IMG/VR virus record: IMGVR_UViG_3300042305_001773
Location: 1-64,000 of that record
DNA: 64,000 nucleotides
Reading direction: 5' to 3' (one strand)
Below, in pieces: positions 1 to 50,199 of the stretch. The translations under genes were made by a program, and so were the position numbers. Below the pieces are notes generated by a model that made no database searches, was not told the DNA's origin, and saw only the letters and a program-made list of their open reading frames with translations. The first letter of the stretch is position 1; the number at the start of each line of letters is the position of its first letter.

Positions 1-371
1 ATCACGTAGGTACGCAGCTCGTCGACGTCCTTCACAGCGCGGGGCGACACGATCCGGTCAAACATGACGCGGTAGCGCGGGCCACGGATGTAGAAGTTAA
101 TCGGGAGCGTCGCAAACGGGAGCGACACAGCCGCCGGGGAATCGGGCTCCTTGTCCACCACCTTGACGGGCTTGTCAGTGTCAACCTGACGGTCAAGCTC
201 GTCGTTGGTGATGGTCAGCGGCGGCATAATCCGCCGGTAGAACCCGTCTTCACGCATCTTGGTGCGCGTGAAGTCATTAACCGCGTCGATGGCCTGCTTC
301 TGCATGCCGGGGGTATCGAGCTGCTCAAAAAGCGTTTCGTTGAGCAGTTGGATCTCTTGCTGAGTGGGCAT
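1..371 (-). CDS. Major capsid protein, N-terminal part (runs off window)
   Basis: Manual translation MPTQQEIQLLNETLFEQLDTPGMQKQAIDAVNDFTRTKMREDGFYRRIMPP...; GGAGG RBS at 380-384; follows protease, scaffold-like and decoration-like genes. Confidence 0.7.
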   Translation of the reverse strand, partial: MPTQQEIQLLNETLFEQLDTPGMQKQAIDAVNDFTRTKMREDGFYRRIMPPLTITNDELDRQVDTDKPVKVVDKEPDSPAAVSLPFATLPINFYIRGPRYRVMFDRIVSPRAVKDVDELRTYV

Positions 372-411
372 TTTGGGAACCTCCATGTTCCTTATTTAGT
401 TAGGGATTAGA

Positions 412-993
412 TCACGGATCGATTGTGGCCGCAGTACCGGCGGGCAGGTACACGCACCAGAAGGAAAGCGTGTCCACACCGTTGTGGTTCTTCGACGCGC
501 CACTCGAAACAACACCGCAAACCGGGTTTACGTACTGCACAGCGTTGGCCTTCGTCAGCACGCCCTCAACAGCAGCGCCGCCGCTGGTGGGAGCAGTCAG
601 AAGGTCACCCGGAGCATACGTTACCGCGCTACCGCCGGACGTCTTCACGTACTCGGTGGTGGCGATTTCATAACCACCGGTCGCAACAAGACCCGACAGC
701 TTGCCCGAAGGCGAAACCGCTTGGTGCATGAAGTTACCGGCCGCTGTGGTACCCGGATTGCTGACGTCAGCATCCGTCGAACCGTTCAGCAAGAAAATCG
801 CGACGCCCGTAGCGCTGACACCCGGAACGAACACGTCCTTGCCGCCCTCTTTCGAGAGATGCACGACGCGGCCGCGCGGAACGTCATAAGCGACTGTGCT
901 CAGCAGCTTGGCCGAGTAGTCGAGGGACGCCATATCGAACCAGCCCTTTTTAACGTCAAGGCCGTGTTCAAACATAAGATCAGGAGCAGGCAT
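412..993 (-). CDS. Putative capsid decoration/cement protein
   Basis: 193 aa, beta-rich, immediately upstream of the capsid gene; GGAGG RBS. Confidence 0.5.
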   Translation of the reverse strand: MPAPDLMFEHGLDVKKGWFDMASLDYSAKLLSTVAYDVPRGRVVHLSKEGGKDVFVPGVSATGVAIFLLNGSTDADVSNPGTTAAGNFMHQAVSPSGKLSGLVATGGYEIATTEYVKTSGGSAVTYAPGDLLTAPTSGGAAVEGVLTKANAVQYVNPVCGVVSSGASKNHNGVDTLSFWCVYLPAGTAATIDP

Positions 994-1048
994 TGTTAGA
1001 CCTCCGTGTCTTTCTCAATTGGAAACGTGTTCCGTAAGGGGGACGAAC

Positions 1049-1474
1049 TCAGGTAGTGGGCGGGTTAAGACCAAGGCCCGTAAACAGCTTTACGTCGGAA
1101 GCCTTGAGGCGACCATCGCGGGCACCCACATACCCGCTCGTCAGGCTGGCTCCCGGGTCGTAGCTGGCGGCCTTTGTGGTCACCGGCGTACCCAGACGAG
1201 CCATTTCAGCTGCGTTTTTATGTGCAGCTAATTTGATAACAAGTTCCATCGTGCGCACCGGATCTTGAAGAGCGGCGGCAAGCGCCTCCTTCTGGTGGGC
1301 CTCGATCCGCTCGTTCTCCACGCACGCCTTGACGGCTTCGGGGATCAGGTGAGCCAGCTTCTCGCTGGTTTCAACCTGCGCCTTTTCGGCGGCGGCGGCT
1401 TTGGTCATCGCGGCATCGGAGTAACCGATGTAGTCGATGATTTTCTGTACGAGCGCGTTATTTTCGGTAGACAT
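1049..1474 (-). CDS. Head assembly protein (hypothetical, KxA-rich)
   Basis: Helical 141 aa; GGAGG RBS; position in head operon. Confidence 0.45.
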   Translation of the reverse strand: MSTENNALVQKIIDYIGYSDAAMTKAAAAEKAQVETSEKLAHLIPEAVKACVENERIEAHQKEALAAALQDPVRTMELVIKLAAHKNAAEMARLGTPVTTKAASYDPGASLTSGYVGARDGRLKASDVKLFTGLGLNPPTT

Positions 1475-1490
1475 TAAAACCTCCGTGTGA

Positions 1491-2828
1491 TCAACGATTC
1501 ACGAGTTCGATGACGTGCTGCTTCATCATGTCCCGCAGCTGGCGCGAACGCTTTGTGCGAGCTTCTTTGACTTGGAACTTGCCAGCACGCTTAAAGTTTA
1601 CAACAGCACGACCGATGGCGTCTAAATCTTTAGCGGCCGCCATCTTCGGCTCTTCCATCGGCGGCATGGCGGCTTCAGGCGCAGCACCAGCTTCCGGCGG
1701 CATACCGCCTTCGGCGCCACCACCAGCACCGGACAGCGCCTGCAGTAAAGCTTCCGGCGGAATGCCCAGCTCTTCAAGCGCCATTGCCAGCTCTTGAACA
1801 GCTTCGTCTTCAGACGGCTCACCGGCAGCTTCGGGCGACGGTCCGCCTTCGGCACCCATCATGGCCTCAAGACCAGCGGGTGCGCCGCCAGCAGCAGCGT
1901 CATCAGCCGGAGCGTCGCTCATACCAGAAGCGGCGTCTTCAGGCGCAGAGTGATCCTCACCTTCGGTAGCTTCTTCTGTCGGATCAGCCGCGGCGGCCTT
2001 GGAGTTTACAAAGCCGATGAACAGGTCAGCCATCTCGTCAGCTTCGCGAATCGTGTTAGCGCACACGTCGCGAACAGACGCTTCAGCGGCTTCCTTGTCG
2101 AGACCAAGATGCGCGGCCAACTCGTAACCAGCTTTGAACGCGGCAGCCTTGTCGCTGCGAAGCGCGGCAAGATCAGAACCTTCGATCTTGCCATCGTTGT
2201 CGGTGTCGAGTTTGTGCTGGTCGCCCTTCAGCGCGCCGGTCGACTCGCTTTTTTCTTCAGACTTCTCTTCGGTCTTTTTCTTTAAAAAAGCCGGCATCTC
2301 AGCCGCCTTCTCATTGTTCAGCTTGCTGGCGCCGAAGTTGATGAGGTTAGCGAGAATGTCGTTACCGAGGGCGCCAGCGCGATCGCGGGCTTCCTTGAAC
2401 GTGACCGAGCTGTACTTCTCGCCGTCGTTAGCCTTGACCGGCGACGACGTGCCCGGGTCATCCTTATCGCCCTTGAAATCTTTTTCGTTGGAGGGGTCTT
2501 CGCCAGTGGCCTTGGCCGAGACGCCGATGTTCGTTTGAACTTCGTCTTGGCGGCCCTCTTGCGACATCTCCGGTGTGTTGTCTACAGCAAGAGCACCCTG
2601 CTGCTTCTTGACGTCAGCTTCATACTCGCTGGCGCGCGCACCGGTGCTGGCGTTTTGAACGCCGTTGTCAGCGCTAGTCGTCGGATGCGAAGAAGCACCT
2701 TGGTATCCACCCGGATCAGCGGGCACGGGACCGGCAGACTTCTCAGCCGCAGTCTTAACAGGGCTTTGCGCAATCTCGGCGGCGAGAGCGTTGAGTTGAT
2801 CGAACAGTGAACGTTGCATCCGTGCCAT
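1491..2828 (-). CDS. Putative scaffolding protein
   Basis: Acidic, Ala/Pro-rich, low complexity, many KxA motifs; lies between protease and capsid genes. Confidence 0.55.
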   Translation of the reverse strand: MARMQRSLFDQLNALAAEIAQSPVKTAAEKSAGPVPADPGGYQGASSHPTTSADNGVQNASTGARASEYEADVKKQQGALAVDNTPEMSQEGRQDEVQTNIGVSAKATGEDPSNEKDFKGDKDDPGTSSPVKANDGEKYSSVTFKEARDRAGALGNDILANLINFGASKLNNEKAAEMPAFLKKKTEEKSEEKSESTGALKGDQHKLDTDNDGKIEGSDLAALRSDKAAAFKAGYELAAHLGLDKEAAEASVRDVCANTIREADEMADLFIGFVNSKAAAADPTEEATEGEDHSAPEDAASGMSDAPADDAAAGGAPAGLEAMMGAEGGPSPEAAGEPSEDEAVQELAMALEELGIPPEALLQALSGAGGGAEGGMPPEAGAAPEAAMPPMEEPKMAAAKDLDAIGRAVVNFKRAGKFQVKEARTKRSRQLRDMMKQHVIELVNR

Positions 2829-2871
2829 GACTTTCTCCTTTGGGGTCTAACCGTTTCCGATTAGCTTCCGT

Positions 2872-4329
2872 TCATGTGACATAATTTTGCAATACACAGT
2901 GGTTTGCTGTCAACCAATTGTTTCCGTATTTCTCGCAGATGGCGGCGTAAGCAGCGATCTTATACAACGCGTAATGTTGCGCAAGAGCTGTTTCTGCTTT
3001 TCCACTCGCTTGCTTGTCGGACGGAAACTCAATTGCCCGGGCGTTACGAAGCGCAGCTAAGTATGCACGTTTCTCAACGCTGACGGGTAATACGCTATGT
3101 GTGTGGGCTACCTTTTCAGCCCACACGCGCACGCTTTGCGGCGCCGCATCAGCTGGAAAGTATACATTGTTTTCAAGCGTCGTGACGATATCTACGTCGT
3201 TAGCGAGCTTTGAAAACACGTTAGGCAGCGCATACGCAACTGCACTAACAAGTGTGGCGTTAGCTGACTTAACTGTCAACGCTAAAAAATCTCGCAGCGG
3301 CAAGATTACGCCAGCGTCGGCCAGTCCGCGTAACACCTCAGACATTTTAACAGAAGGGGTGTTATTTGTATCAATAGCCGGCTGTACTTCGCCGGAGCTG
3401 GCGAGCGCGGTCTGGGCCCAGTTACCGTTGGCGCCTGCATCCTTCTCCGCCTGCGCGAGCTGTGTTAACGCCTCTAACTGTGTCTGGACCCGCGCGGCGG
3501 GGGTACGGCCGAGGTCAAACCCAAGCGGCGCTGTAATACCCAGTTGCTCGGCTAACTCGGCGCCGGAAACGCAGCTACTTGAAGCGGCTTTTTGCAGTTG
3601 ACCAGATACATAGGCAATACGGTCGGCCGGGCGAAACACGTGGCTGATATCAAAAAACGTCGGATTCGGGTTATCGGCGTGTAGTACGTGGCCGTCTTCC
3701 AGCACCCGCCCCATGTTGTGCTTTAATCCGCCGGCCTTGCAGTGACCGCCGTTTTCAACCGAGTCGCAATATTCAGCGCGGGTCTTCGCCGTGTTGCCGC
3801 AAGATGAACACTTGTCGAACGGGATCTTGCAGGCCATCGACACGGCGATCTCTTTGTCGTTGGCCAGCTTTTCTAGTTCTTTGTCCGCGATCAACCCGCC
3901 GTTCCTGTCCGCGGCTTCTTTGGAGCCGTTTAGCGCCACGACTAACTCAATGCGTTTCATAGGTTCGTGATAGGCGCTGGCCTTTACGATACCGAAACTC
4001 TTAGCGGGGTTTTTGTTGGCGTGATCACGATAAAAGCGGGAGAATTTCTCAAACGTCTGGTGGTAGTTCCGGCAGCAGTCGCGCGTAAAACCGTCGCCGT
4101 TACGATTCGGGCCGTAGTCTTCCGTAGCGCCAATCGCGATCATGTGGACCGGTACTTCGTCTTTGGCAAACTTGATGTTTTCAAGCTTGTGCGCAAACTC
4201 GGCGCCGGCGCGTTTGACGAGGTCCTGCTTGTCGGCGCCGATAATACCGCGGCTAGATACTTTGATCAGCGCGGCAACGGGCTCGCTAAAATCCTGAGCG
4301 TGCGGCTGAATAACCTTGATCATGCTCAT
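2872..4329 (-). CDS. Putative prohead (capsid maturation) protease
   Basis: NRNGDGF, YRDHAN and VSMAC..DKCSSCG motifs (His/Ser catalytic candidates plus Zn ribbon); position upstream of scaffold and capsid. Confidence 0.65.
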   Translation of the reverse strand: MSMIKVIQPHAQDFSEPVAALIKVSSRGIIGADKQDLVKRAGAEFAHKLENIKFAKDEVPVHMIAIGATEDYGPNRNGDGFTRDCCRNYHQTFEKFSRFYRDHANKNPAKSFGIVKASAYHEPMKRIELVVALNGSKEAADRNGGLIADKELEKLANDKEIAVSMACKIPFDKCSSCGNTAKTRAEYCDSVENGGHCKAGGLKHNMGRVLEDGHVLHADNPNPTFFDISHVFRPADRIAYVSGQLQKAASSSCVSGAELAEQLGITAPLGFDLGRTPAARVQTQLEALTQLAQAEKDAGANGNWAQTALASSGEVQPAIDTNNTPSVKMSEVLRGLADAGVILPLRDFLALTVKSANATLVSAVAYALPNVFSKLANDVDIVTTLENNVYFPADAAPQSVRVWAEKVAHTHSVLPVSVEKRAYLAALRNARAIEFPSDKQASGKAETALAQHYALYKIAAYAAICEKYGNNWLTANHCVLQNYVT

Positions 4330-4331
4330 GT

Positions 4332-5315
4332 TTACTCTCCCGCGGACGAGCCGCCTAAACTGTTAAGAAGTGCCGGTACGCCAAGGGCGCCAAGAACTGG
4401 CAGGCCGATGCCAGCCAGCCGTCCACCAACTCGCGGCATACGACGAAAAGCCTGCTGTAGCTGCGCCGCTGTGAGCTTTTTGCCGGCGCCGCCAACGCCA
4501 GACTTACCCTCAGCCGCGATTGCGGCTAACACGTTAGCGACGTCATCAGCGTTGCGACCCAACGAGCCCCCGAGGAAATTACCGCGGGCCGCGCGTGTTG
4601 CTGTGTTGACGCGGCCGGGTACGGAAGCGGGCGTTGTCATACCAGCTGTTTCTAGCGGTAAACTGACGTCTCGCGGCACGTGGGCCGCCCCACGCAAACG
4701 ACGAATGCTGTTCAAAATTGTTTTTGTAAGCGACGGATCGTTTGTCGCTTCAGGCAGCTTGCCGATGTGTTTTGTCAGATTGTTTGTAATGCGCGTGGGA
4801 CCACTGTTTGCGCGCAACTGCTCAATAGTCGGCTTCAACTGTTTGGCAGTAGCGTCGCCGGAGTCAAGGAAACGGTCGAGTTTGCCGTACGCGTCTAGCG
4901 AGTTAGCGGCTTGGTGGCCGCCGTAAGCGCCAGCACCGGCACCAGCGAGATTTAACAGTGCGCCGGCGGACGAACCGTCTTGATTCTTAGCGGCAGCGAT
5001 AGCCGGCGGCGGTTCCGCGCCCGTCAGCAGCATGTTTTTTGCGGCTGTCGCGCCGAGACCGCCAATACCGCCCATCAGCGCATAATCAAGTATGGCGCGT
5101 CGTTTCTTCTTACCCTGTAGCGCACCGACGACGCCGCCAGCGCCAGCACCGATTGCAGCGTTCTGCAGATACGGGTTACTGAGAATCTGCGACAGGTCGG
5201 CCTGTTTGCCAAGAGCCGCCGCTACACTGGCCACCTTTTCGACCGCGGGGTCGGGTGTGCGGGTAGCAATTGCGGAAAGACCGCGAGCGAGTTCGTGTGT
5301 TTCGGTTGTTTTCAT
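4332..5315 (-). CDS. Gly-rich putative internal virion/ejection protein
   Basis: Glycine-zipper hydrophobic segments; EKVA and GKQA near N-terminus; no Cys seen. Confidence 0.45.
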   Translation of the reverse strand: MKTTETHELARGLSAIATRTPDPAVEKVASVAAALGKQADLSQILSNPYLQNAAIGAGAGGVVGALQGKKKRRAILDYALMGGIGGLGATAAKNMLLTGAEPPPAIAAAKNQDGSSAGALLNLAGAGAGAYGGHQAANSLDAYGKLDRFLDSGDATAKQLKPTIEQLRANSGPTRITNNLTKHIGKLPEATNDPSLTKTILNSIRRLRGAAHVPRDVSLPLETAGMTTPASVPGRVNTATRAARGNFLGGSLGRNADDVANVLAAIAAEGKSGVGGAGKKLTAAQLQQAFRRMPRVGGRLAGIGLPVLGALGVPALLNSLGGSSAGE

Positions 5316-5317
5316 AC

Positions 5318-6697
5318 TTACACCAAACCGCGCGTGTGTAATTGAGATTCGAGGTTATTTTTTAACGCCTCAGCGCGGATCTTCTCCATCTCGATCAGCT
5401 GTTTGACGTCAAAGTCGGCTAACTGTCCTGCTTCAAGTCGCTTCCGAAGCAGGGCCTGCATCGCCGCGCCAGAACCCGTGAAGTTCGGAGCGATCTCGGC
5501 GATTTGGTTGTAAGCCGAGGCGATCTCGTGCGGGTCATAACCGGAAATGACAGGATCGTTCAGGATCAGGTCGTTAAGGACGCCGCGCGATTTAATCTGC
5601 TGTAGTTTGTTTTCATGCTCAGCATCAGACATGCGCGTGAACGCTGTTTGTTTCTGACGCAGCGGATCGGTCGCTTTTGCTTCGTTGGCTTCTAGCTCGC
5701 CGGCCATCCCGGCCGGGCTCATAAGCTTACCGAGATGCCCCATCGTGCCGCTGTATGACGTCAGCGGTGGGGTTGAATCTTGTTTTTTTTTATCTTTAAC
5801 CGCAGCTACCTTGAGGGCGAGCGGGGCCGTCTTTGGGTCATGAAGAATCGAACCTGTGATCGGTTCCGGCGCGACTTTAGGTTCTGCAGCGGGCGGATTT
5901 AACGCAGCTAATTTACTGGCGGCGTTGTTATGTAGCTCAACCGCTTTGATCACATTTTCAACCAGTGTTACCACAGGGAGCGCACCAAAGAAGTTTTCGG
6001 CGGTGGCGGCTTGTTTTGTAAAGTGCGGATAAACAGCCGCAATTTTATTTAACGTAGAAACACCGAGGTCGCCGAGGCGCAGACCCACCTCACGGATCGC
6101 ATCCGGGAACGACATGTTGCCGGGTACGCGGAAATACTGCGCTAGCTCTTCCATCGCCGACGCGGCTTTGTGGTGCATCACCGTGGCGAGGCGACGAATC
6201 TCTTCAGCGTCGCGGCGCGCCGCTTGCTTTTCGCTGTAGGCTCGGCGGGCCGCCGAGTGGTCGTCGCGCGGCGGTGGTACGTATTGCGGCGCCGGAAGAA
6301 CGTTCTTTGCCGCGGCGGCCTTACTGAGACTGGCGTTACGCCGATTAATAAACCCCGTCGGCGATACCGCATACTCTGTCGAGATGATGCTGTTGTTTGT
6401 TAACTCAGCCGATGTTTTGACGTGCTTAGGATACAACGCGTCCATGACAACGTTTACATCAGCCAGTTGAAAGTCAGCCGCTTTCTCTAGTGTTGTTTCA
6501 CCCAGCTCGCGCTGCTTGTTGGTCCGACCGGTGTTATACGCGTGCACCATAAGATTAATGTGCCCGGCTGGAATACTGGCGTCACTCGCGCTTTTGATAA
6601 TCGCGTTGTTCGGGGTGGCGCCTTCGTTTACCAACGTGGCCGCACGCTCAATTGCGCTCAGCAATTTTTGCTCAGCTTCTTTACTTAATGCCCGCAT
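5318..6697 (-). CDS. Putative head core protein, KxA-rich
   Basis: 459 aa with about ten KxA motifs; no Cys seen. Confidence 0.45.
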   Translation of the reverse strand: MRALSKEAEQKLLSAIERAATLVNEGATPNNAIIKSASDASIPAGHINLMVHAYNTGRTNKQRELGETTLEKAADFQLADVNVVMDALYPKHVKTSAELTNNSIISTEYAVSPTGFINRRNASLSKAAAAKNVLPAPQYVPPPRDDHSAARRAYSEKQAARRDAEEIRRLATVMHHKAASAMEELAQYFRVPGNMSFPDAIREVGLRLGDLGVSTLNKIAAVYPHFTKQAATAENFFGALPVVTLVENVIKAVELHNNAASKLAALNPPAAEPKVAPEPITGSILHDPKTAPLALKVAAVKDKKKQDSTPPLTSYSGTMGHLGKLMSPAGMAGELEANEAKATDPLRQKQTAFTRMSDAEHENKLQQIKSRGVLNDLILNDPVISGYDPHEIASAYNQIAEIAPNFTGSGAAMQALLRKRLEAGQLADFDVKQLIEMEKIRAEALKNNLESQLHTRGLV

Positions 6698-7628
6698 TGG
6701 TTTTCTCCGGGTAATGCAGTTCTTGGATCAGACCTTGATTTTGTAAAGAACCGCCAGCCGCAATAATCATCATTTCATCGTTGCGTAATTCTGCAGCGCC
6801 GTCATCAAAGGGTAACATTTTTATAGCTGCGGAATCCAGTTTAGTCCCCACTTTGAACGGCAACGTAGCCAACATGGCGCCAATGTTTTCGACGATTGTG
6901 GCCTGCGATTTTGTGGCGTTGTCGCTGTTTTTCTCGATCTCTACATATTTTACAAAAGAATCGATCAGAGGTAACTGGGTGTGGCTGTTTACCGGCACTG
7001 TAAGACTTGCAATAGCGGCCTTGTACTTCATCGAGTGGATGGCAAAATCTTGGAAGAAAGCCGAAACACCGCCCGCTGAGTCCGGTTTGGGAATCTCTAG
7101 GCAGCGATTAATCGCGGCATCCAACACGTATTGCCCGCCCCGGAAACCAAGTAGCTTCCACAGTAGGTCGTAATGCCGCTCTTGAAGACCGCGCGTTACT
7201 GCGTCCGCCATCACAACGTTCACGACATAGTCTGTGTTTACAAGTTTATCACGCACGTCAAAGAACGTATTCGCGTATGCTTCGATCGTCTCGACCTCAG
7301 TGCCGAGCTTATGCGCAATCTCTTGATCAGATTCGCCGGCCAAAATACGCGCCTCGATGGCCCAGCGCGTCGGTTGCTTGTCGGCGGCCCAGAGCGAGTG
7401 CGCCCAGAACATCGCGCCGTCCCGCAGCATGGCGCCGTATGTAGCCGTCGGGTCGTTGTTTGCCTGCTCGAAATGGCGCTTGAGCCGTAAAGCGCGCCGG
7501 ATCCACACAAAGCCGTCAGCGCCATCCAGCGCGCGTGACGCCTTACGGCCGCCGCTGTCGATTTGGACAGCCCGCAGCCAGCGCCAGTTTGGCGGGCGCA
7601 ACGGGTTAGTACGGAACGCGTTTAACAT
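6681..7628 (-). CDS. Hypothetical protein
   Basis: 315 aa ORF overlapping both neighbours. Confidence 0.6.
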   Translation of the reverse strand: MLNAFRTNPLRPPNWRWLRAVQIDSGGRKASRALDGADGFVWIRRALRLKRHFEQANNDPTATYGAMLRDGAMFWAHSLWAADKQPTRWAIEARILAGESDQEIAHKLGTEVETIEAYANTFFDVRDKLVNTDYVVNVVMADAVTRGLQERHYDLLWKLLGFRGGQYVLDAAINRCLEIPKPDSAGGVSAFFQDFAIHSMKYKAAIASLTVPVNSHTQLPLIDSFVKYVEIEKNSDNATKSQATIVENIGAMLATLPFKVGTKLDSAAIKMLPFDDGAAELRNDEMMIIAAGGSLQNQGLIQELHYPEKTNAGIK

Positions 7629-8011
7629 TAGCGCAACGTCGGCGTATCGACGGTAACGGAGAAGACCAGCGTCTTGGTAGCCGACGGCGTGATCTTGAGG
7701 TAAAGATATCTTTGCGGGTTCGAGGGTGAACCGTCGCGATTAAGATACGACACGTTTAAATCGTTTTTGAACGGCGTCGTTTGGTCAAACGACAACACTT
7801 TAAACGTGTCTGCGGGCAGGTCGCTGTTGGGCGCCTTGTCTTGTTTGCTGGAGTACAGCGCAGCCGTAAAGTTACCGGTCGAGCCGCCGGCTGCTTCCAC
7901 AAGGCTGTAACCTTTCAAAACACCGCGGTGCGGCATGGGTACTGCGACAGTAGTCGCTTCGCCGCTGTTGGCTGTAAACGTGACGCTACCGGACCATACT
8001 GTGCTGGGCAT
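7628..8011 (-). CDS. Hypothetical beta-rich protein, possibly structural
   Basis: 127 aa, operonic. Confidence 0.5.
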   Translation of the reverse strand: MPSTVWSGSVTFTANSGEATTVAVPMPHRGVLKGYSLVEAAGGSTGNFTAALYSSKQDKAPNSDLPADTFKVLSFDQTTPFKNDLNVSYLNRDGSPSNPQRYLYLKITPSATKTLVFSVTVDTPTLR

Positions 8012-8020
8012 ATTTCACCT

Positions 8021-10402: not shown

Positions 10403-10483
10403 GGCCAGCCTCCATGCTGCGCTCAAAATTAGACACAGCATTAATTTACTGCGTCGAAGTCCCTATATCCTACAAAAACAGGC

Positions 10484-12605: not shown

Positions 12606-13323
12606 TGTCCGCTATGCTCCGAATCATGGCGGCGATAGCGTTTGCTTTGATCTGCATTTGCGTCGGCGCATTCGGATTGGAGTAGCCGGGGCCAAAGGGG
12701 CGCCCTATCGAAGAAGCCGACTTTTCGGGGCGGTCCCACCACGCGGCTTTCGACGGGTCGCCTTCCGGCGGCGCGGCATTCGGCGGCATCGGTCCGCCCG
12801 GAGGCATCGGGCCGCCGGGTGGTTGCATGCCACCTTGCGCGTTCGGGTCCTGCGGCGGCGGGGCCATCGGGCCGCCCGGAAGAGCTGTTTCGGCCGGTGG
12901 GGCGCCCGTCGTACCCGGCGGTAGCACCAACGACTCTGGCGGTACCTGAACGCCCATCGCGTTCATGATGGCCGTAAGCTGCTGCTGCATGTTGTACAGC
13001 CGATAATCGAGCATTTGCATCATCTGCTCCGGCTTGAGCTTTTGCTGCGCGCCGGCAGGAGCTGCGCCCGGAGCGGCGGGTGCGGCGGGCGCTGCGGGAG
13101 GTGCAGCGGGAGGCGCCATTCCCATAGCCGCAGGATCCGCTGGCGGTGCGGCTGCTGCAGCAACAGCAGACGGATCGGCCGGCGGCACAGCCCCCATGGC
13201 GGCTGGGTCAACCGGCGGAGCACCACCAGCAGCAGCGGGATCCACCGCCGCTCCGGGCACTAATGCGGATTTCTCAAAACGCGCCTTCGCCAGCGCAATA
13301 AGCTCGGGGTTTACCGTAAACAT
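12595..13323 (-). CDS. Pro/Ala-rich putative virion protein
   Basis: PADPAAMG-like repeats; EKSA twice; GGAGG RBS. Confidence 0.55.
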   Translation of the reverse strand: MFTVNPELIALAKARFEKSALVPGAAVDPAAAGGAPPVDPAAMGAVPPADPSAVAAAAAPPADPAAMGMAPPAAPPAAPAAPAAPGAAPAGAQQKLKPEQMMQMLDYRLYNMQQQLTAIMNAMGVQVPPESLVLPPGTTGAPPAETALPGGPMAPPPQDPNAQGGMQPPGGPMPPGGPMPPNAAPPEGDPSKAAWWDRPEKSASSIGRPFGPGYSNPNAPTQMQIKANAIAAMIRSIADNAG

Positions 13324-41321: not shown

Positions 41322-43511
41322 TTACTTACTGGAATCGGCGGCATCGTCGTCGTCCAGAATGCTTTTGCTGGCTTGGGGTTTGGCGTCTGGATATTTTAAC
41401 AGCCGCCGCTTCTTCTTTGAAAGCGGGCGTTTGGGCGGCGTTAATTTGAGCGTTTGAAACACAGCGCTCGCCTTTTCTTGCACTTCTTTGTCTTCTGTTA
41501 ACTCTCCTCGCCGCCGCTTGAGATACTTCTTTAATTCCTGCTCCTGATAGGCTTGGAGCATAGTTTTTACTTTGTCAGACCGGGTGCGCGCAACTAACTT
41601 CGCGGGGTCAATCGCCCAGTGCTGCAGCGCCCAGCCTCGTCTTGGCGTAGGATTAGTCATAAACGGCCCGCCATGACGCGCTTTGAAGCTCGCCCAGCGC
41701 TTGATCTGGCGCGCATCTTCGTCGGGAAGCCTGCGGCCCGAATTGTAGTTCTGGTACCACTCCAGCCAGCCCTTCGGGTCATGTTCTGTCACCCATTCCG
41801 GCTTCCATTCGCCTAAACTCGCGAGCCGTGGGCCCTCTTTTTCGTATAACGACTTGTACACACCCATGCGATGCAGCTGGCCGGGCGTGAAGTCAGGCTG
41901 AAACTCAGGAAGATCCGCGCTCTGCTTCTCCTGCTCTCTTTGCTTGCGGTATTTATCGCCCTCGTCTTGCAGGATCTTGCGGAAGATCTCGTTGAGCTGT
42001 TCTTTCTCGGCGGTAAGGTGTTCAAGTACTTCGTCACCTGTGCGCTCGCGCTTGTACCCCATGAGCTTGCCGATGAAGCTCGGGTCTTGGCTGGCACTTA
42101 GATATCTTTGCACTTGGACGTTCTTGAGTTCTTCAGGGAGATCTCGATGCGAGTCAAAGCGCAGACCACGACCACGAGCTTGCTGGCTGCGCGACTCATG
42201 CCAGTGCGGATCTAAAAGCTGAATGAGACTGGTGCCCTTGGTAGACAAACCCTCGGCGCCAGCAGGGCCAATTAAGAGCGCCCGGAGCTTGCCTTGGTTG
42301 TATGCGTCCACAGCGGCTTGGCGCGCCTTTGAGCTAACGCCGCCATGGAAAAACGCATGCGGGATCTTGGCTTTCTCTAGACCAGCTGCGTAGGGCGCCA
42401 AGCCAGAGTCAATGAAGTTGGAATAGATAATCGCCTTCTTGCGCTTGTCTTCACCCAGTGTCTTCTGCAGGTTCTGAAACGCGGCTTGTAATTTGGCGCT
42501 CTGCTGAAACGCCTTGGCCGGATCTTTGTCGGCGCGGAACGGCTGCGTGGATAAGCTCACTTGGCGCAGGCCCGTGAGAAAGCTATTTAACTTGGCCAGC
42601 TCGTCGCGGGACAACGGAAACTCTTGATCCAGCTTCCACAAAAACCCCGGCGGAATCTTCGTGCGAATAGCTTTTTGAATCTTGTCCTGCGCGTTGGACA
42701 ACGGTACGCGCACGACCTCTTCTTTAACATTTACACCTTCGGGCGTTTTGCTGGGCTGGTAATCTACTTTGCCTGCAAGCAACTGCCGCAGTTCTTTTTC
42801 GTTCTTGACGACTGGCTTGACGCCGGGCTTCACGCCACGCAGCCAACCAAACAAACCCGGCCGCACGGTTTTGTAGTCGATATACCGCTTCTCGAATTCT
42901 TCCGGCGTAATCTCTTTGTTATGGAGCATCGAGAGCAGATTGGCGAGATCCGTAGGCGAATTCGTGATCGGCGAACCAGTAAGTAACATTAAACGCTTCG
43001 CCTGCGCGGCGGCTTCAGCAGCTCCGGCCGAACTCGCGCTCCCCGGATTACGGAGCCTGTGCGCCTCGTCCATGATCAGCGTGCTGGGCGGCTTTTGAAA
43101 CTTCTTGCCCAGCGCCAGCCCCGTGTAGCTCATGATCTCGGGGTTAGAGTTCTGCGTGAACTTCTTGATTTCTTTGTCGAAATTACCCCTGAGACTAGCC
43201 GGGACTACCACGCCATACTCTTCGCCGTCTTGCTTCTTCGCTTCTTCAGCGGCGGCCAGTGAAGACAGCGATTTACCAGAACCTAAGCCGTGATAGACCA
43301 GTAAGCGCGGATCAGTGGTAGAAATACGGTCGGCGATTCTCTGCTGATGTTCCTGCAGCTGGATCTCGGGAAGAAGTTCAGCTTGTTTTTCGCTGCCGTT
43401 TTGGCGCTCGGAATTCCCGGCTGCCAAATTGGCCACTTTGTGCCATACGCTATCGGGCAGTGCGGATGGCTTGGGAGTGCTGCCGAGAATGCTATTTATT
43501 TCTGCGCTCAT
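41322..43511 (-). CDS. SF2/SNF2-like helicase of D6/D11 type with C-terminal W-rich domain
   Basis: LLVYHGLGSGKS, DEAH, TGSP, GAEGLS, DPHW..SR..QARGRGLR.DSH..LP. Confidence 0.88.
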   Translation of the reverse strand: MSAEINSILGSTPKPSALPDSVWHKVANLAAGNSERQNGSEKQAELLPEIQLQEHQQRIADRISTTDPRLLVYHGLGSGKSLSSLAAAEEAKKQDGEEYGVVVPASLRGNFDKEIKKFTQNSNPEIMSYTGLALGKKFQKPPSTLIMDEAHRLRNPGSASSAGAAEAAAQAKRLMLLTGSPITNSPTDLANLLSMLHNKEITPEEFEKRYIDYKTVRPGLFGWLRGVKPGVKPVVKNEKELRQLLAGKVDYQPSKTPEGVNVKEEVVRVPLSNAQDKIQKAIRTKIPPGFLWKLDQEFPLSRDELAKLNSFLTGLRQVSLSTQPFRADKDPAKAFQQSAKLQAAFQNLQKTLGEDKRKKAIIYSNFIDSGLAPYAAGLEKAKIPHAFFHGGVSSKARQAAVDAYNQGKLRALLIGPAGAEGLSTKGTSLIQLLDPHWHESRSQQARGRGLRFDSHRDLPEELKNVQVQRYLSASQDPSFIGKLMGYKRERTGDEVLEHLTAEKEQLNEIFRKILQDEGDKYRKQREQEKQSADLPEFQPDFTPGQLHRMGVYKSLYEKEGPRLASLGEWKPEWVTEHDPKGWLEWYQNYNSGRRLPDEDARQIKRWASFKARHGGPFMTNPTPRRGWALQHWAIDPAKLVARTRSDKVKTMLQAYQEQELKKYLKRRRGELTEDKEVQEKASAVFQTLKLTPPKRPLSKKKRRLLKYPDAKPQASKSILDDDDAADSSK

Positions 43512-43513
43512 GC

Positions 43514-43759
43514 TCAGTTCACCATGAGATTGCGCGCAGTTTGATACATCGCCCACAGCCCCAAGCCGGCGGACACCAAGCCCAGATATTTAAACGACGT
43601 GTACACCGTGACAAAGAAGTAAATGCCGAGCCAACACGCCAACGCACCCGTCACAACTGCGGCGATTATCCATTTTTTCACCGCAAACAATGCGGCGATT
43701 GGCCCGCACAGCAGCACGGCGCACACGATGAAAAAGACCAGTAACGCCAGACTTTCCAT
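43514..43759 (-). CDS. Membrane protein
   Basis: Three TM segments. Confidence 0.6.
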   Translation of the reverse strand: MESLALLVFFIVCAVLLCGPIAALFAVKKWIIAAVVTGALACWLGIYFFVTVYTSFKYLGLVSAGLGLWAMYQTARNLMVN

Positions 43760-43766: not shown

Positions 43767-44615
43767 CTATTCCGCAGGAGTGCTGTTTACGCTGGCTTTC
43801 GGCTCTGGCCCTAATGTAGCCTGACCGACCAGCGCGTGCTCGTGTTGTCGGATCTGCAATTCTACCCAATCCCGGTACATACTCACACGCGTAAATGCGC
43901 TGTCGTCGCCATAGGTCCCGTCTGGTTTTCCGTCGGCGTGCGCCAAAAAAGAGTTAATCCCGGCCAGTTCGTTGCCGATAAACATGCCGCCCCCTGAATC
44001 TCCGGGCGCAATCATGAACTCCAGCGGAAACCGCCCATCTCGCCGTGGTGAGCAGGCCACCACCGAGAGAAACGCTGACGAAAGTTTGTTTTGCCCCGCG
44101 CGCCGTTTGTTGTCGGACGTGGTAGCGCCTGTAGTAAAATTCCCCGTTGAACCCCAGCCCGCAATGGTGACCGACTTCCCGTTTTCATCTGCTTTGCTGT
44201 ACAGCGGCACGTAAAAGTCCAGTTTGAAATCTTCTTCCACGTAGCACAGCGCGATGTCGTGCAGGCCCACTTTGTCTTCGTTGTAATCTTTGTGCCGAAC
44301 TTTGTATGCCACCGGGTGTTTCTTCTCGCCAACGTAAATCACATCGTGTTTTGATTCGTTAATAACATGCGCCGCGGTCAATGCCCAATGCGGTCGAATA
44401 ATCACCGCCGACGCTAGTTGCTCGTGGGTTTTCTCGCACTTCTTGCAGTCCACAATGTTCGTGATGCGGACGACAAAGGGAAACTGCTTGCCAAATTCGA
44501 CGTACTTGGCGTCCGGCGTGTTGGGGTCGATCGTGCCAGCCATCGCTACCCGAGAGGCAGCGATCAGAATAATCACGTAGCGTAGCAGGCGGGCGAATAG
44601 TTCTTGCGCGTTCAT
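43767..44615 (-). CDS. Secreted trypsin-like (S1) serine protease
   Basis: Signal peptide, LTAAH, DIAL, GDSGG. Confidence 0.9.
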   Translation of the reverse strand: MNAQELFARLLRYVIILIAASRVAMAGTIDPNTPDAKYVEFGKQFPFVVRITNIVDCKKCEKTHEQLASAVIIRPHWALTAAHVINESKHDVIYVGEKKHPVAYKVRHKDYNEDKVGLHDIALCYVEEDFKLDFYVPLYSKADENGKSVTIAGWGSTGNFTTGATTSDNKRRAGQNKLSSAFLSVVACSPRRDGRFPLEFMIAPGDSGGGMFIGNELAGINSFLAHADGKPDGTYGDDSAFTRVSMYRDWVELQIRQHEHALVGQATLGPEPKASVNSTPAE

Positions 44616-47485: not shown

Positions 47486-47565
47486 GGTTATCTCCTTTGG
47501 AGGTTATGGCGATGAAACGGCTGGAGACACAACACGTGGCTTACCAGCAAAGAGCTAGGCTCCTT

Positions 47566-47598
47566 ACTAGATATACCCGGTTTTGGCCGTTTATTTAG
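47566..47598 (-). promoter_or_regulatory. Phage promoter P1
   Basis: CTAAATAAA-N14-TATATCTAGT. Confidence 0.75.
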
Positions 47599-47601
47599 AT
47601 A

Positions 47602-50199
47602 TCAGCGCCCGGGCTTGCCGGCCGGCTGTTGTCTGGCCGCGGCGTCAGCTTTAAAGCCGCCCAGTGTCTTCTTGCCATAGTGCGCGAGCAGAGGCGCAGA
47701 AGACGCCAGCATGTACGTGGGCAGGCCAATGAACGCCGACCGGCCGCCCTTGAGCTTCATCTGGCGCATGAGCTTGGCGCCCCGACGAGACGCATCAAAC
47801 TCAGACGCTAACATCGGCATAGAACCGACTGTGCCCGCAATCGCCGAGTTCCGAGAGTTGTCCTCGTTGTTTGAAAGCAGCGCGCCGGCCGTACCTAATC
47901 CAAGCGCGGGCCGGCCGATTTGATTACCGCGCATGAGCCACTTGCCGCCCATGTGGTGTCCCAGCTCGTGCGCCAAAACACCCGGATTTTTCATTCGCCA
48001 GATGTGCCCAATCGTGGGTTTTGATATCCCGATTCCCGGATTCGCTGGTGTATAAAACGCTGGAGAATTACGCACAATATCAGCAGCTGACCGGCGCATT
48101 CTGTACTTGATGTTATTCATGAGATCGCCAATCCAGTTGCCCGTTGTTTTAGGCGCTATTTTCGGGTCAATCTTGCTGGCGACGGTCAAATTATCTACGA
48201 CATCTACGCCCTGACTCTTCGCGTAGTCACTGATTTGCTGCCACGCTCTGTTCCTTTCCATCGTTACCGGGGTGTCAAACAATTCAGGGCGCGCCACACG
48301 GTTCATGTACGCAGTTAATGGCAAGCCAATCGCAGCATTTGTCGCGGGCATGCCACCGAGATACCAGCCCATCGAGTGCCCTAGACCGGGCTTAGCGGGT
48401 TCTTTTTTTTTAACTTCGGCTGCGCTTTTTTTACCAAAGCGCGCGGCAAAATCTGCGGGCGAGACCGGGCGCAATTGAAACGGCGCGGCGGGTGTAGCGG
48501 GTGCTGGGGTTGCTGCGGGCGGGGCTGGTGGTGCAGTAACCGGAGCTGCCGGGCGCTGAACAACCGGCGCAGGTTTAGCCTGCGGCGCAACAACCGGGGC
48601 CTGACGAACTGCTTGAACTGGCGCTGGTTTCGGCTGGGTTACGGCGGGGGCAGCAGGGCGTGGCGTCGGGGCTTGTGACGGCAAGCTCGTCGCGGCACCG
48701 CGTTGACTCATGTAAACGTCGCGCATTTTTTGATAAGTTTGCATTTTTTGCCATTCCGGCACGCCGTTGTTTACGTTTACCACATTCTTCATGTAGTTAG
48801 TGAGGTCTGCGGACGTGGGTCTGGCGGGCATCTTGAACGCTGTCTGCGCGGCGGCGGCCACCGGCTTTTTCGCAACCCCGCTGACCGCTTTACCGGCCAT
48901 GCGACCAATTGAGCCGAGTAAACCGGCCAGCTTCTCGCCGCCGACAGAATTAGCCGTCCCAAACGCTGCGTTACCTGTAATATCACCCGTCGAAGACAAC
49001 GCGCCGTATGAATTAATGGGATTGGCGTTGGGAGACGATCCGCCGCCAACAGGGGGTAGTTGGCCAGACGGGGCCGGGGAGCCCATGTTTGCTGGCTGGG
49101 CGGCGGGAGCCTGTGGTTGGGCCTGTGGCGCCTGTGCCTGCATGCCCATAGGCAGCGGCGTACCCATCGCAGGCATGGCGTAACGTTTAATTCCGGCGTT
49201 TGCAGGCATGCGGGCAGCCTCTCGGGCCTCAATTTCAGCCCTTTCATTCTCTATCGCCTGCATAATGGGCTGCGACAAAACCGCTGAGATCTTCGCTAAC
49301 AAGGGATTTATTACGTTATTTGGCTTTGTTTCCGAGTTACACCTTTCGCCCTTGGTTTTGACGACCTTGGGTGGATTTTCGCCTGCAACTGTTGGCTTAT
49401 CACTGGCCGGCTGCTCGATATAGACCTCTTTAGTATCCGCTTGCTTGGATAATTTCCTGTAAATATCGAGGGCTACAGAGTTTACAGCCGATTGTTTATA
49501 AGTTGTCATATTGGGTTTATTTGCAAAGGCTGCGTTAATGGGGGATTGGCTTGCGGTACCGGTGACATGGGGCAAAAACCCGACAACTCCACCAACACCA
49601 AGGTTCATGACACCGTTTGCGACCCCGATACCCTTCTCTAATGTCTCGGTGGGGAGTTCGCCGTACTGTGTGACATAGCGCTGGGTCTGATTCTGAAGCT
49701 GCTGGACGTCATTGAAGGCTTTAGTGGCCTTGTTGACGGTACTTTTATTAACGCCAGCGATTGTTTTAGGTAGTTTCGCGTTTACGAGCTTATCGGAGAG
49801 TTCTAATTGGCGCGCAGACAGAACAGCGGCGTTTGGGAGGCGCTTGAGTAGCCTGTACGAGCGCATGGGGTTAAAGAACAGCACGCTTTCCCTTGCCGCG
49901 TTGTTAAATAACTGCTGCAACATCGGCGAGCCAACCCGTTTTGATAGCATTCCGGCAGCTGCAAGGCCGGCGGTTGTGCCCAGAGTGCTTAATCCGGCGG
50001 CAGCGGCAGTGTCTCGGGCTGCGGCACCGGGAGAAAAGTCGGCTTTTTTGCTATCTGTATCTGACTCGGGCTCTTTTTTACTGTCAGACGCGTACATGGG
50101 GAGTTTCTTTTTGGTCGGATACTCATGCGCCCAGCGTTTAGCGATCTCTGGATGCTCGGCCCACAGAAACCTACGCTGTTTTTCAGACTTAAACGGCAT
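47602..50199 (-). CDS. Putative virion polyprotein with C-terminal Zn-metallopeptidase
   Basis: MPFKSEKQRRFLWA N-module; KKA, KQSA, KQA, KLA and KSA sites; LAHELGHH...EFDAS. Confidence 0.65.
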   Translation of the reverse strand: MPFKSEKQRRFLWAEHPEIAKRWAHEYPTKKKLPMYASDSKKEPESDTDSKKADFSPGAAARDTAAAAGLSTLGTTAGLAAAGMLSKRVGSPMLQQLFNNAARESVLFFNPMRSYRLLKRLPNAAVLSARQLELSDKLVNAKLPKTIAGVNKSTVNKATKAFNDVQQLQNQTQRYVTQYGELPTETLEKGIGVANGVMNLGVGGVVGFLPHVTGTASQSPINAAFANKPNMTTYKQSAVNSVALDIYRKLSKQADTKEVYIEQPASDKPTVAGENPPKVVKTKGERCNSETKPNNVINPLLAKISAVLSQPIMQAIENERAEIEAREAARMPANAGIKRYAMPAMGTPLPMGMQAQAPQAQPQAPAAQPANMGSPAPSGQLPPVGGGSSPNANPINSYGALSSTGDITGNAAFGTANSVGGEKLAGLLGSIGRMAGKAVSGVAKKPVAAAAQTAFKMPARPTSADLTNYMKNVVNVNNGVPEWQKMQTYQKMRDVYMSQRGAATSLPSQAPTPRPAAPAVTQPKPAPVQAVRQAPVVAPQAKPAPVVQRPAAPVTAPPAPPAATPAPATPAAPFQLRPVSPADFAARFGKKSAAEVKKKEPAKPGLGHSMGWYLGGMPATNAAIGLPLTAYMNRVARPELFDTPVTMERNRAWQQISDYAKSQGVDVVDNLTVASKIDPKIAPKTTGNWIGDLMNNIKYRMRRSAADIVRNSPAFYTPANPGIGISKPTIGHIWRMKNPGVLAHELGHHMGGKWLMRGNQIGRPALGLGTAGALLSNNEDNSRNSAIAGTVGSMPMLASEFDASRRGAKLMRQMKLKGGRSAFIGLPTYMLASSAPLLAHYGKKTLGGFKADAAARQQPAGKPGR

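What the first reader, a model, noticed from the sequence alone, without database searches (positions are those of the whole stretch)
1..50199. Pervasive K-x-A punctuation: candidate prohead-protease cleavage code defining a virion cargo set
Seen: K-x-A (often EKxA, followed by A/S/G) is dense in the scaffold-like protein, the protease, the 459-aa and ~790-aa proteins and the capsid N-terminus (MQKQA). It falls at domain boundaries in multidomain ORFs (25487, 34517, 40034, 41322, 47602). Most of these multidomain proteins are also Cys-free or Cys-poor. Established: T4 gp21 and phiKZ gp175 process head proteins at short Glu-ending motifs. Inference: this protease cuts after K-x-A, releasing packaged effectors from polyproteins.
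Basis: partly seen in the sequence, partly recalled or inferred. Interest (0 to 1): 0.85.

Follow-up and report, generated by a model that had tools for sequence, protein, structure and literature searches.

The report
Capsid-protease cut-site motif K-x-A

Summary
K-x-A enrichment is real but local, not pervasive. Five head-module proteins in 1049-10441 carry 53 sites against 23 expected (z 6.9). The other 68 ORFs carry 88 against 99. Reversed or re-spaced patterns, R-x-A, K-x-S/G and the Glu-ending T4/phiKZ motifs are all flat. The DNA pattern occurs only in the codon frame.

The enrichment holds in 25-36 orthologues per protein. It is the top-ranked of about 1,580 residue pairs in 24 of 26 distant metagenomic relatives, and in the cultured phages Arash (Salmonella) and D69 (Vibrio).

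The extended consensus is [FLMI]-[EV]-K-[QE]-A then [SA]-D. Two sites that bracket the catalytic domain of the 485-aa protease are invariant out to Bacillus phage G. One site about 27 residues into the capsid protein is present in all 10 lineages aligned.

The protease model matches predicted prohead serine proteases and has invariant His103 and Ser164.

Best reading: a prohead protease cutting after K-x-A (P3-x-P1), dismantling scaffold, propeptides and itself. Cleavage is inferred, not shown.

The "polyprotein cargo" part is not supported. The multidomain ORFs are an RNA polymerase, a helicase and a NUDIX enzyme, with no enrichment and at most a few plausible single sites.

This is a new variant of a known kind.

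The parts
2872..4329 (-). 485-aa capsid maturation (prohead) serine protease candidate. Predicted layout: N-propeptide 1-41, catalytic domain about 42-249 (invariant His103 and Ser164, plus a Cys cluster C174/C177/C188), and a helical C-terminal domain 250-485. It carries 12 K-x-A sites.
   Evidence: tblastn matches residues 22-266 to Arash gp222, phage G gp19 and Gordonia phage Stormageddon 'capsid maturation protease'. The AF2 model of residues 1-270 has pLDDT 79 and pTM 0.79. Foldseek against BFVD gives 37 hits at E<=1e-3, and the named ones are almost all prohead proteases.
4207..4215 (-). K39-R-A41, a predicted N-terminal autoprocessing site just before the catalytic domain.
   Evidence: K and A are invariant in alignment A2 across the window clade, L037, Arash, D69 and phage G. 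K39 is also invariant in the 34-sequence A3.
3583..3591 (-). K247-A-A249, a predicted release site at the C-terminal end of the catalytic domain.
   Evidence: Invariant in A2, including phage G. Kept in 35 of 35 orthologues although local identity is only 0.42. It lies in the only disordered stretch of the model (residues 232-252, pLDDT<50).
1491..2828 (-). Scaffold-like 445-aa acidic, low-complexity protein with 10 K-x-A sites. It is predicted to be cut into pieces of about 118 aa or less.
   Evidence: 10 vs 5.8 expected. 36 orthologues average 10.0 vs 5.5, and eight sites are kept in 35-36 of 36. Motif density is maintained in lineages of about 32% identity.
1049..1474 (-). 141-aa head-module protein with 6 K-x-A sites (a predicted core or scaffold component that is degraded).
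   Evidence: 6 vs 2.0 expected. The orthologue ratio is 3.3, and five sites are kept in 33 of 33.
5318..6697 (-). 459-aa Cys-free protein. It has 12 K-x-A sites in residues 1-298 and none in 299-459, suggesting a long multi-cut N-terminal propeptide and a retained C-terminal domain.
   Evidence: 12 vs 4.8 expected. In 13 lineages of about 29% identity there are about 2 sites per 50 aa through residue 300 and about 0 from residue 351 on. Only 3 columns are positionally conserved.
8021..10441 (-). 806-aa head-module protein (like the Arash gp218 structural protein; portal identity unproven). Its 13 K-x-A sites cluster at residues 1-50, 151-300 and 551-650. The rest of the protein is nearly motif-free.
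   Evidence: 13 vs 6.0 expected. Cluster pattern across 12 deep lineages. Weak BLASTP matches to Arash gp218 and its D69 counterpart. No portal family or structure match.
4332..5315 (-). 327-aa Gly-rich, Cys-free protein with two N-terminal sites (K27, K37), suggesting a short propeptide.
   Evidence: Site 27 is kept in 10 of 10 orthologues and site 37 in 8 of 10. The flank score of site 27 is 3.9.
1..386 (-). 5' part of the major capsid protein gene, cut by the contig end. The K-Q-A at 291-299 predicts removal of about 27 N-terminal residues.
   Evidence: Full-length orthologues are 308-316 aa. In the 10-lineage capsid alignment A5 (23-97% identity, including Arash and D69), K25 is nearly invariant and A27 invariant. 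The protein is about 30% identical by BLASTP to the Arash major capsid protein (28% by tblastn).
412..993 (-). 193-aa head-module protein without K-x-A (predicted uncleaved virion component).
   Evidence: 0 sites vs 1.1 expected. Orthologues average 0.4 vs 0.9.
6681..8011 (-). 315-aa and 127-aa head-module proteins that essentially lack the motif (predicted not to be substrates).
   Evidence: 1 vs 2.1 and 0 vs 0.5 expected. About 0.1 site per 50 aa across 14 deep lineages for the 315-aa protein.
13264..13272 (-). E-K18-S-A in the 242-aa Cys-free protein 12595-13323: a candidate short-propeptide site outside the head module proper.
   Evidence: Kept in 27 of 27 orthologues at local identity 0.57. 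Flank score 2.8.
43380..43388 (-). S-E-K57-Q-A in the SNF2 helicase 41322-43556: the best-scoring candidate site outside the head module, at the start of the helicase core.
   Evidence: Top flank score of the 88 non-head sites, 3.8. Kept in 80% of orthologues at local identity 0.49. Arash helicase gp217 aligns from its residue 1 to window residue 62.

Best explanation
The window carries the head-assembly module of an uncultured ~200-kb phage. The 485-aa protein at 2872-4329 is a prohead serine protease of a family not yet in Pfam.

It most likely recognises the extended motif [F/L/M/I]-[E/V]-K-x-A followed by S/A and then D, and cuts after the Ala. That makes K the P3 residue and A the P1 residue.

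Predicted sequence of events inside the assembled prohead:
- The protease frees its own catalytic domain at K39-x-A41 and K247-x-A249.
- It removes about 27 residues from the capsid protein.
- It chops the scaffold-like 445-aa and 141-aa proteins into small pieces.
- It chops the first ~300 residues of the 459-aa protein and three segments of the 806-aa protein.
- It also chops itself, so that these pieces can leave and make room for DNA.

Shown: the motif's enrichment, specificity, conservation and placement, and the protease-like fold. Inferred: that the motif is cleaved, by this enzyme, and at which bond.
For: Statistics.
- 53 vs 23.4 sites in five proteins (z 6.9). A-x-K, K-A, K-x-x-A, R-x-A, K-x-S, K-x-G, [LI]-x-E and [ASG]-x-E are all flat.
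- The DNA pattern occurs only in codon frame 0, with unbiased codons.
- The K and A of the motif are more conserved than other K and A residues (0.89 vs 0.76; 0.87 vs 0.69). The middle residue is less conserved (0.65 vs 0.75).

Replication.
- Orthologue families show ratios of 1.8-3.3.
- K-x-A ranks first of about 1,580 pairs in 24 of 26 distant head modules, z 5-9.
- Arash gives 46 vs 21 and D69 gives 51 vs 22, both rank 1.
- Genome-wide in Arash, the head module has 48 vs 23.5 and all other ORFs have 188 vs 222.

Context. 576 sites from 10 lineages give preferences confined to P5-P2'. A flank matrix trained only on distant lineages scores window head sites at 0.80, against -1.8 for control tripeptides.

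Placement.
- Invariant sites bracket the catalytic domain out to phage G.
- The K247 site lies in the only disordered segment of the model.
- The capsid-protein site is conserved in all 10 lineages.
- Motif density is maintained while positions turn over in the 459-aa and 806-aa families.

Enzyme. Foldseek hits are to predicted prohead proteases. His103 and Ser164 are invariant.

Precedent.
- SPN3US gp245 cuts after A-x-E with Ser at P1'. It removes long multi-cut propeptides and its own C-terminal propeptide (PMC10052503).
- Herpesvirus protease precursors have a release site after the protease domain and internal destabilising sites (PMC4498786).
- Herpesvirus assemblin cutting V/L-x-A before S is from my own knowledge.
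Against: - No experimental cleavage data exist for any member. The Arash virion proteomics paper gives no peptide-level data and does not mention a protease.
- The protease has no Pfam or NCBIfam hit, no PDB sequence match and no PDB fold match.
- hhalign against HK97 gp4 finds nothing.
- BFVD matches have modest TM-scores (0.3-0.57).
- Several conserved sites lie in predicted helices of the folded catalytic domain (residues 137-139 and 154-156), where cutting would require unfolding.
- The signal is weaker in phage G (rank 4) and Mycobacterium phage Kamryn (rank 15), and not significant in Stormageddon.
- The scissile bond (after A or after K) cannot be read from sequence.
Confidence: 0.75

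Rival explanations
1. K-x-A is a docking or targeting motif that is not cut. It would bind the capsid interior, the scaffold or the protease to recruit proteins into the prohead.
For: Enrichment, conservation and context show a recognised linear motif, not hydrolysis. The motif also occurs inside helices of the folded protease domain.
Against: - The two family-wide invariant sites sit exactly at the borders of the catalytic domain, one of them in a disordered linker.
- One site lies a fixed distance into the capsid protein N-arm.
- The dense, positionally drifting copies in scaffold and propeptide regions match how SPN3US propeptides are cut at many motif copies (PMC10052503).
- The P3-x-P1 spacing with a small P1' residue is the pattern of known head proteases.
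Confidence: 0.1
2. The motif is cut, but after the Lys, by a Lys-directed enzyme such as the phage's own trypsin-like protease (43767-44615) or a host protease. The prohead protease would not be responsible.
For: A trypsin-family protease is encoded in the window (PF00089, 2e-20). Lys is the most constrained residue of the motif.
Against: - The trypsin-like gene has no tblastn match in any of 50,697 phage records, including Arash and D69, which both carry the motif.
- R-x-A is not enriched (12 vs 14.7).
- The invariant sites flank the prohead protease domain in every family member.
- Enrichment is confined to the head module.
Confidence: 0.05
3. The enrichment is a by-product of Lys/Ala-rich helical or low-complexity composition in scaffold-type proteins, with no specific function.
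For: The enriched proteins are Ala-rich, and Ala is also over-represented just after the motif.
Against: - A-x-K, K-A, A-K, K-x-x-A and A-x-x-K are not enriched in the same proteins.
- The motif residues are selectively conserved while the middle residue varies.
- The flanking preferences (Phe/Leu at P5, Glu at P4, Ser at P1', Asp at P2') are not those of an Ala-rich helix.
- The signal is the top-ranked pair in lineages of very different composition.
Confidence: 0.03
4. One reading: the large Cys-free multidomain proteins (25487, 34517, 40034, 41322, 47602) are packaged cargo or polyproteins, and the head protease processes them at K-x-A.
For: - Non-head K-x-A sites are retained slightly more than other residue pairs (mean percentile 0.578, p 0.018; controls about 0.5).
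- Their flanks are more motif-like than control tripeptides (-0.84 vs -1.8, p 3e-6).
- Individual sites are conserved in variable surroundings: 25487 site 217, 34517 site 15, 40034 sites 60 and 210, 41322 site 57, 47602 sites 256 and 427.
- The Arash homologues of the RNA polymerase and the helicase were abundant in virion preparations (PMC10585845).
- Cys-poverty is conserved.
Against: - There is no enrichment in any of these ORFs or their orthologues.
- They are recognisable single enzymes, not polyproteins.
- The Arash preparation listed 116 proteins, including many metabolic enzymes, so virion location is uncertain.
- The statistical signals are weak and uncorrected for multiple testing.
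- Arash gp217 lacks the N-terminal extension altogether.
Confidence: 0.15

Closest known systems
T4 gp21 and the phiKZ gp175 / SPN3US gp245 prohead proteases (cleavage after L/I-x-E, or after S/A/G-x-E)
   Same: - Two specific residues separated by one free residue (P3-x-P1), with a small P1' residue.
- Many motif copies in scaffold, core proteins and long N-terminal propeptides.
- A short propeptide on the capsid protein.
- Self-processing of the protease next to its catalytic domain (PMC10052503).
   Different: - The specificity residues are Lys and Ala instead of hydrophobic or small residues plus Glu.
- The Glu-ending motifs are not enriched here.
- There is no detectable sequence relation to those families.
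- The substrate set here is predicted, not measured.
Herpesvirus assemblin (pUL26-type protease-scaffold precursor)
   Same: - Ser/His protease domain, then a release site, then a C-terminal scaffold-like part.
- Internal sites that destabilise the protease (PMC4498786).
- Ala at P1 and Ser at P1' (own knowledge).
- The window protease has the same domain order, with K247-x-A249 at the junction.
   Different: - P3 is Lys here, whereas it is Val/Leu in herpesviruses.
- Foldseek found no PDB assemblin match.
- The catalytic third residue is unknown here.
HK97 gp4 (Peptidase S78) type head maturation proteases
   Same: Gene position upstream of the scaffold and capsid genes. His-then-Ser order of the invariant residues. 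BFVD fold hits include COG3740 head maturation proteases.
   Different: No Pfam S78 hit and no hhalign match to gp4. This protein is twice as long, with a Cys-cluster insertion and a large helical C-terminal domain.
Uncharacterised protease homologues: Salmonella phage Arash gp222, Vibrio phage D69 VPHD69_0270, Bacillus phage G gp19
   Same: Homologous catalytic domain (30-38% identity). Both flanking K-x-A sites are conserved. The head modules show the same enrichment.
   Different: Arash gp222 is annotated only as 'structural protein' and the D69 protein as hypothetical. G gp19 is called a head maturation protease (PMC12484599). No cleavage motif was reported for any of them in the papers I could read.

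Membership tests
Prohead (capsid maturation) serine proteases with the herpesvirus-assemblin-like fold | Assemblin-like fold | tested here: inconclusive
   The AF2 model (pLDDT 79, pTM 0.79) matches 37 BFVD predicted structures at E<=1e-3. The named ones are nearly all prohead proteases of T4 type, COG3740/HK97 type or haloarchaeal virus type. No solved structure matches (best PDB hit E 0.36), and TM-scores are 0.3-0.57.
Prohead (capsid maturation) serine proteases with the herpesvirus-assemblin-like fold | Conserved catalytic His followed by a Ser nucleophile | tested here: met
   His103 and Ser164 (in the S-M-A/G-C motif) are invariant across the window clade, L037, Arash, D69 and phage G. 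Catalysis itself was not tested.
Prohead (capsid maturation) serine proteases with the herpesvirus-assemblin-like fold | Gene lies in the head module, upstream of the scaffold and major capsid genes | tested here: met
   The gene order is protease, scaffold-like protein, 141-aa protein, 193-aa protein, capsid protein. The same order is seen in Arash, where gp226 is the annotated major capsid protein.
Prohead (capsid maturation) serine proteases with the herpesvirus-assemblin-like fold | Processes capsid and scaffold proteins and itself during maturation | not testable with these tools
   Only inferred from motif placement.
Pfam Peptidase_S78 (HK97 gp4) / Peptidase_S77 (T4 gp21) | Significant match to the family profile | tested here: not met
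   No Pfam hit at E<=0.01, or even E<=5, for the window protein or four homologues. hhalign of A3 against HK97 gp4 gives probability 0.1%. The only PHROG hit is the unannotated phrog_2774.
Glu-directed head-protease cleavage codes (T4 L/I-x-E; phiKZ/SPN3US S/A/G-x-E) | Enrichment of x-E motifs in head and scaffold proteins | tested here: not met
   [LI]-x-E 19 vs 19.9, A-x-E 28 vs 24.5, S-x-E 14 vs 10.1, G-x-E 10 vs 11.7 in the five K-x-A-rich proteins.
Portal protein (for the 806-aa protein 8021-10441) | Sequence or profile similarity to a known portal | tested here: not met
   No Pfam or PHROG portal hit. No tblastn hit in the phage collection. No PDB match with a 16-sequence profile. hhalign against phage G portal gp14 is negative. 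The gene annotated as portal in Arash (gp204) is a different gene with no homologue in the window.

The most novel reading that the evidence does not exclude
The K-x-A code reaches beyond the head module. Under this reading, a conserved Cys-free set of enzymes is loaded into the prohead, trimmed once or twice at conserved K-x-A sites, and delivered to the host with the DNA. The set would include the fused beta/beta' RNA polymerase, the SNF2 helicase, the 2H-NUDIX protein and several proteins of unknown function. Cys-poverty together with a conserved consensus-like site would then predict the ejected cargo of a whole clade of ~200-kb phages.
Probability: 0.2. Interest if true: 0.7.

Novelty: new variant of a known kind. 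Interest (0 to 1): 0.55.

Why it matters
Head-protease cleavage codes are known experimentally for only a few phages (T4, phiKZ/SPN3US, HK97). Here a code can be read from genomes alone, for a large and almost uncultured clade. That clade comprises 397 IMG/VR relatives and more than 1,100 protein clusters.

The residues (Lys at P3, Ala at P1) differ from the Glu-directed phage codes. The P1/P1' pair resembles that of herpesvirus assemblin.

The motif gives concrete predictions of mature protein ends for annotation, cryo-EM model building and virion proteomics. It also identifies an unannotated protease family. Two cultured members on laboratory-tractable hosts (Arash, D69) make it directly testable.

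Protease specificity also matters for phage-host conflict, because some CBASS sensors are triggered when a prohead protease cuts a bait loop (PMC12991175).

Tried and rejected
- Megablast of 20 kb against the phage collection found no match.
- Pfam, NCBIfam and PHROGs gave no named family for the protease or for any K-x-A-rich protein.
- A PDB sequence search with a protease profile found nothing.
- The first AF2 run, on the full-length protease with 22 close sequences, failed for the catalytic domain (pLDDT<50). A second run on residues 1-270 with 34 more diverse sequences worked.
- Foldseek against PDB gave nothing significant. hhalign against HK97 gp4 was negative.
- Portal identity of 8021-10441 could not be shown. 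The annotated Arash portal gp204 has no homologue in the window and no Pfam portal hit either.
- The Arash paper and its supplements hold no peptide-level data to check neo-N-termini.
- The phage G structure paper and Cheng et al. 2004 are not held.
- A literature search for K-x-A together with prohead terms found nothing.
- A DNA-level motif was considered and rejected, because the pattern is codon-frame-specific and codon-neutral.
- Composition or helix bias was rejected, because the control patterns are flat.
- The phage's trypsin-like protease was rejected as the responsible enzyme, because it is absent from Arash and D69.
- The excess in the HNH endonuclease 30273-30977 (6 vs 1.3) is treated as chance. 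Its sites are no better conserved than their surroundings, and p 0.0005 across 77 ORFs is borderline.

Full report
WHAT THE WINDOW IS. All long ORFs are on the minus strand. The window is positions 1-64000 of a 205-kb IMG/VR contig. It has no near DNA match among 50,697 deposited phages. The only cultured relatives by capsid protein are Salmonella phage Arash and three Vibrio phages (D69, D148, D181), at about 28% identity.

In transcription order, the low-coordinate end reads as follows:
- A 1,467-aa fusion of RNA polymerase beta with the N-part of beta' (13344-17747).
- A 242-aa protein.
- The C-part of beta' (10484-12364).
- The head module: an 806-aa protein (8021-10441), 127-aa and 315-aa proteins, a 459-aa protein (5318-6697) and a 327-aa protein.
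- The 485-aa protease (2872-4329), a 445-aa acidic scaffold-like protein (1491-2828), and 141-aa and 193-aa proteins.
- The major capsid gene, which the contig end cuts.

Arash has the same order around its annotated major capsid protein gp226.

CHECKING THE OBSERVATION. Per-ORF shuffles show an excess of K-x-A in five proteins only: the 141-, 445-, 485-, 459- and 806-aa proteins. Pooled, they hold 53 sites against 23.4 expected (z 6.9), and K-x-A followed by A/S/G gives 30 against 6.5 (z 9.6).

The controls are flat: A-x-K, K-A, A-K, K-x-x-A, R-x-A, K-x-S, K-x-G and the Glu-ending T4 and phiKZ motifs. The underlying DNA pattern occurs 53 times in the codon frame and 2-10 times in each other frame, with ordinary codon usage.

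Over the whole head module, K-x-A has the second-highest z of 1,600 residue pairs tested (z 4.7), behind a low-count pair (NW, 6 vs 1.0). In the other 68 ORFs it is at 88 against 99 expected.

So the motif is real but local, not pervasive. MQKQA is not the capsid N-terminus: the ORF starts 22-27 codons upstream.

REPLICATION.
- Thirty-six related IMG/VR loci (protease 65-97% identical) keep the excess in every orthologue of the five proteins, with ratios of 1.8-3.3.
- Many sites are kept in all sequences even where the surroundings vary.
- The K and A of the motif are more conserved than other K and A residues, and the middle residue less so.
- In 26 more distant head modules (protease domain 30-61% identical), K-x-A is the top-ranked pair in 24, with z 5-9.
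- It is also top-ranked in Arash (46 vs 21) and D69 (51 vs 22).
- Across the whole Arash genome, the head module has 48 vs 23.5 and everything else 188 vs 222. The three most enriched ORFs all lie in the head module.
- The signal fades with distance: rank 4 in phage G, rank 15 in a cluster C mycobacteriophage, and not significant in a Gordonia phage.

THE MOTIF. Pooling 576 sites from ten lineages gives preferences confined to seven positions:
- P5: Phe/Leu/Met/Ile.
- P4: Glu (3.8-fold) or Val.
- P3: Lys.
- P2: Gln/Glu, with Asp, Gly and Pro excluded.
- P1: Ala.
- P1': Ser (3.3-fold) or Ala.
- P2': Asp.

A flank matrix trained only on distant lineages scores window head sites far above control tripeptides.

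PLACEMENT.
- Two sites are invariant in an alignment of protease homologues that reaches phage G at 30% identity. K39-x-A41 lies just before the catalytic domain and K247-x-A249 just after it. The second falls in the only disordered stretch of the structure model.
- The capsid protein has one site, present in all ten lineages aligned (23-97% identity), a fixed seven residues before a conserved Phe.
- In the 459-aa family, lineages of about 29% identity keep about two sites per 50 residues through residue 300 and none after 350, while only three columns are positionally conserved.
- In the 806-aa family, sites cluster in three segments and the rest is nearly empty.
- The 315-aa protein has essentially none.

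Maintained density with drifting positions argues for continuing selection, not inheritance alone.

THE ENZYME. The protein has no Pfam, NCBIfam or PDB sequence match.

With a more diverse alignment, the N-terminal 270 residues fold confidently (pLDDT 79, pTM 0.79). Foldseek finds no solved structure. It does find 37 predicted viral structures at E<=1e-3, and the named ones are almost all prohead proteases. His103 and Ser164 are invariant.

One Gordonia homologue is annotated as a capsid maturation protease. Phage G gp19 is called a head maturation protease in PMC12484599.

MECHANISM. I conclude that this is a prohead serine protease cutting after K-x-A. The P3-x-P1 spacing with a small P1' residue is that of SPN3US gp245 (A-x-E, Ser at P1'). 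That enzyme also removes long propeptides by multiple cuts and trims its own C-terminus (PMC10052503). The order protease, release site, scaffold-like tail, together with internal self-destabilising sites, parallels herpesvirus protease precursors (PMC4498786). Ala at P1 and Ser at P1' is the assemblin pattern (own knowledge). Cleavage, the responsible enzyme and the scissile bond are all inferred.

RIVALS. Composition bias and a DNA-level motif are excluded by the controls. The window also encodes a trypsin-like protease, but that gene has no match in any deposited phage, including Arash and D69, and Arg does not substitute for Lys. A non-cleaved docking motif cannot be excluded by sequence alone, but it fits the placement less well.

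THE WIDER CLAIM. The multidomain ORFs are enzymes: a 2H phosphoesterase-NUDIX-DUF5661 protein, an SNF2 helicase, and three proteins without family matches. None is enriched.

There is a weak signal that some single sites are genuine. Non-head K-x-A sites are retained slightly more than other pairs (p 0.018), and their flanks are more consensus-like than controls (p 3e-6). The best case is site 57 of the helicase, at the point where the Arash homologue begins.

The Arash homologues of the polymerase and helicase were abundant in a virion preparation, though that preparation listed 116 proteins (PMC10585845). I rate packaging plus limited processing of these enzymes as possible (about 0.15-0.2) and polyprotein release of effectors as unsupported.

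VERDICT. This is a new variant of a known kind: a head-protease cleavage code with an unreported specificity, defined computationally for a large, mostly uncultured clade, and testable in two cultured members.

Noticed in passing
28782-29816 (-): A Volactin-family actin-like protein (PF25216, E 8e-62, full-length match) encoded by the phage. It is conserved in 15 relatives.
   Followed up: no
13344-17747 (-) and 10484-12364 (-): The multisubunit RNA polymerase is arranged as one 1,467-aa beta + beta'-N fusion plus a separate beta'-C protein. Both have no Cys at all (P 4e-8 for the fusion), and they sit directly beside the head module. Their homologues, Arash gp206 and gp216, were among the most abundant proteins in the Arash virion preparation.
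   Followed up: partly
44654-46669 (-): A 671-aa protein with no family match is strongly depleted of K-x-A in 10 orthologues of only about 37% identity (0.7 observed vs 5.1 expected). This could mean it is exposed to the protease and selected to resist it.
   Followed up: partly
43767-44615 (-): A trypsin-family serine protease (PF00089, 2e-20) with no tblastn match in any of 50,697 deposited phage genomes.
   Followed up: partly
22493-23320 (-): A peptidoglycan-binding domain fused to a matrixin-type (M10) metallopeptidase, possibly a lysis or cell-wall enzyme.
   Followed up: no
59467-59807 (-), and 27339-27412 and 60031-62102 (-): A phage-encoded tmRNA (tag ending PALAA) and six tRNA genes (Asn, two Leu, Glu, Val, Lys).
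   Followed up: no
41322-43556 (-); L052/L053 and L050 orthologues: Helicase orthologues share a short N-terminal peptide (NSILDD). Some carry an inserted P-loop-kinase-like domain between it and the helicase core. The window ORF probably starts at Met16, not at the GTG.
   Followed up: no
30273-30977 (-): An HNH homing endonuclease with 6 K-x-A vs 1.3 expected. The sites are no better conserved than their surroundings, so this is probably chance.
   Followed up: yes
52220-53455 (-) and 62976-63938 (-): An AAT/NAAA-like Ntn hydrolase and a group-1 glycosyltransferase lie among the non-structural genes.
   Followed up: no
L167:28120-29859 (Arash gp204): The gene annotated as portal in Arash has no Pfam portal match and no homologue in the window. 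Which protein is the portal in this clade is therefore open.
   Followed up: partly
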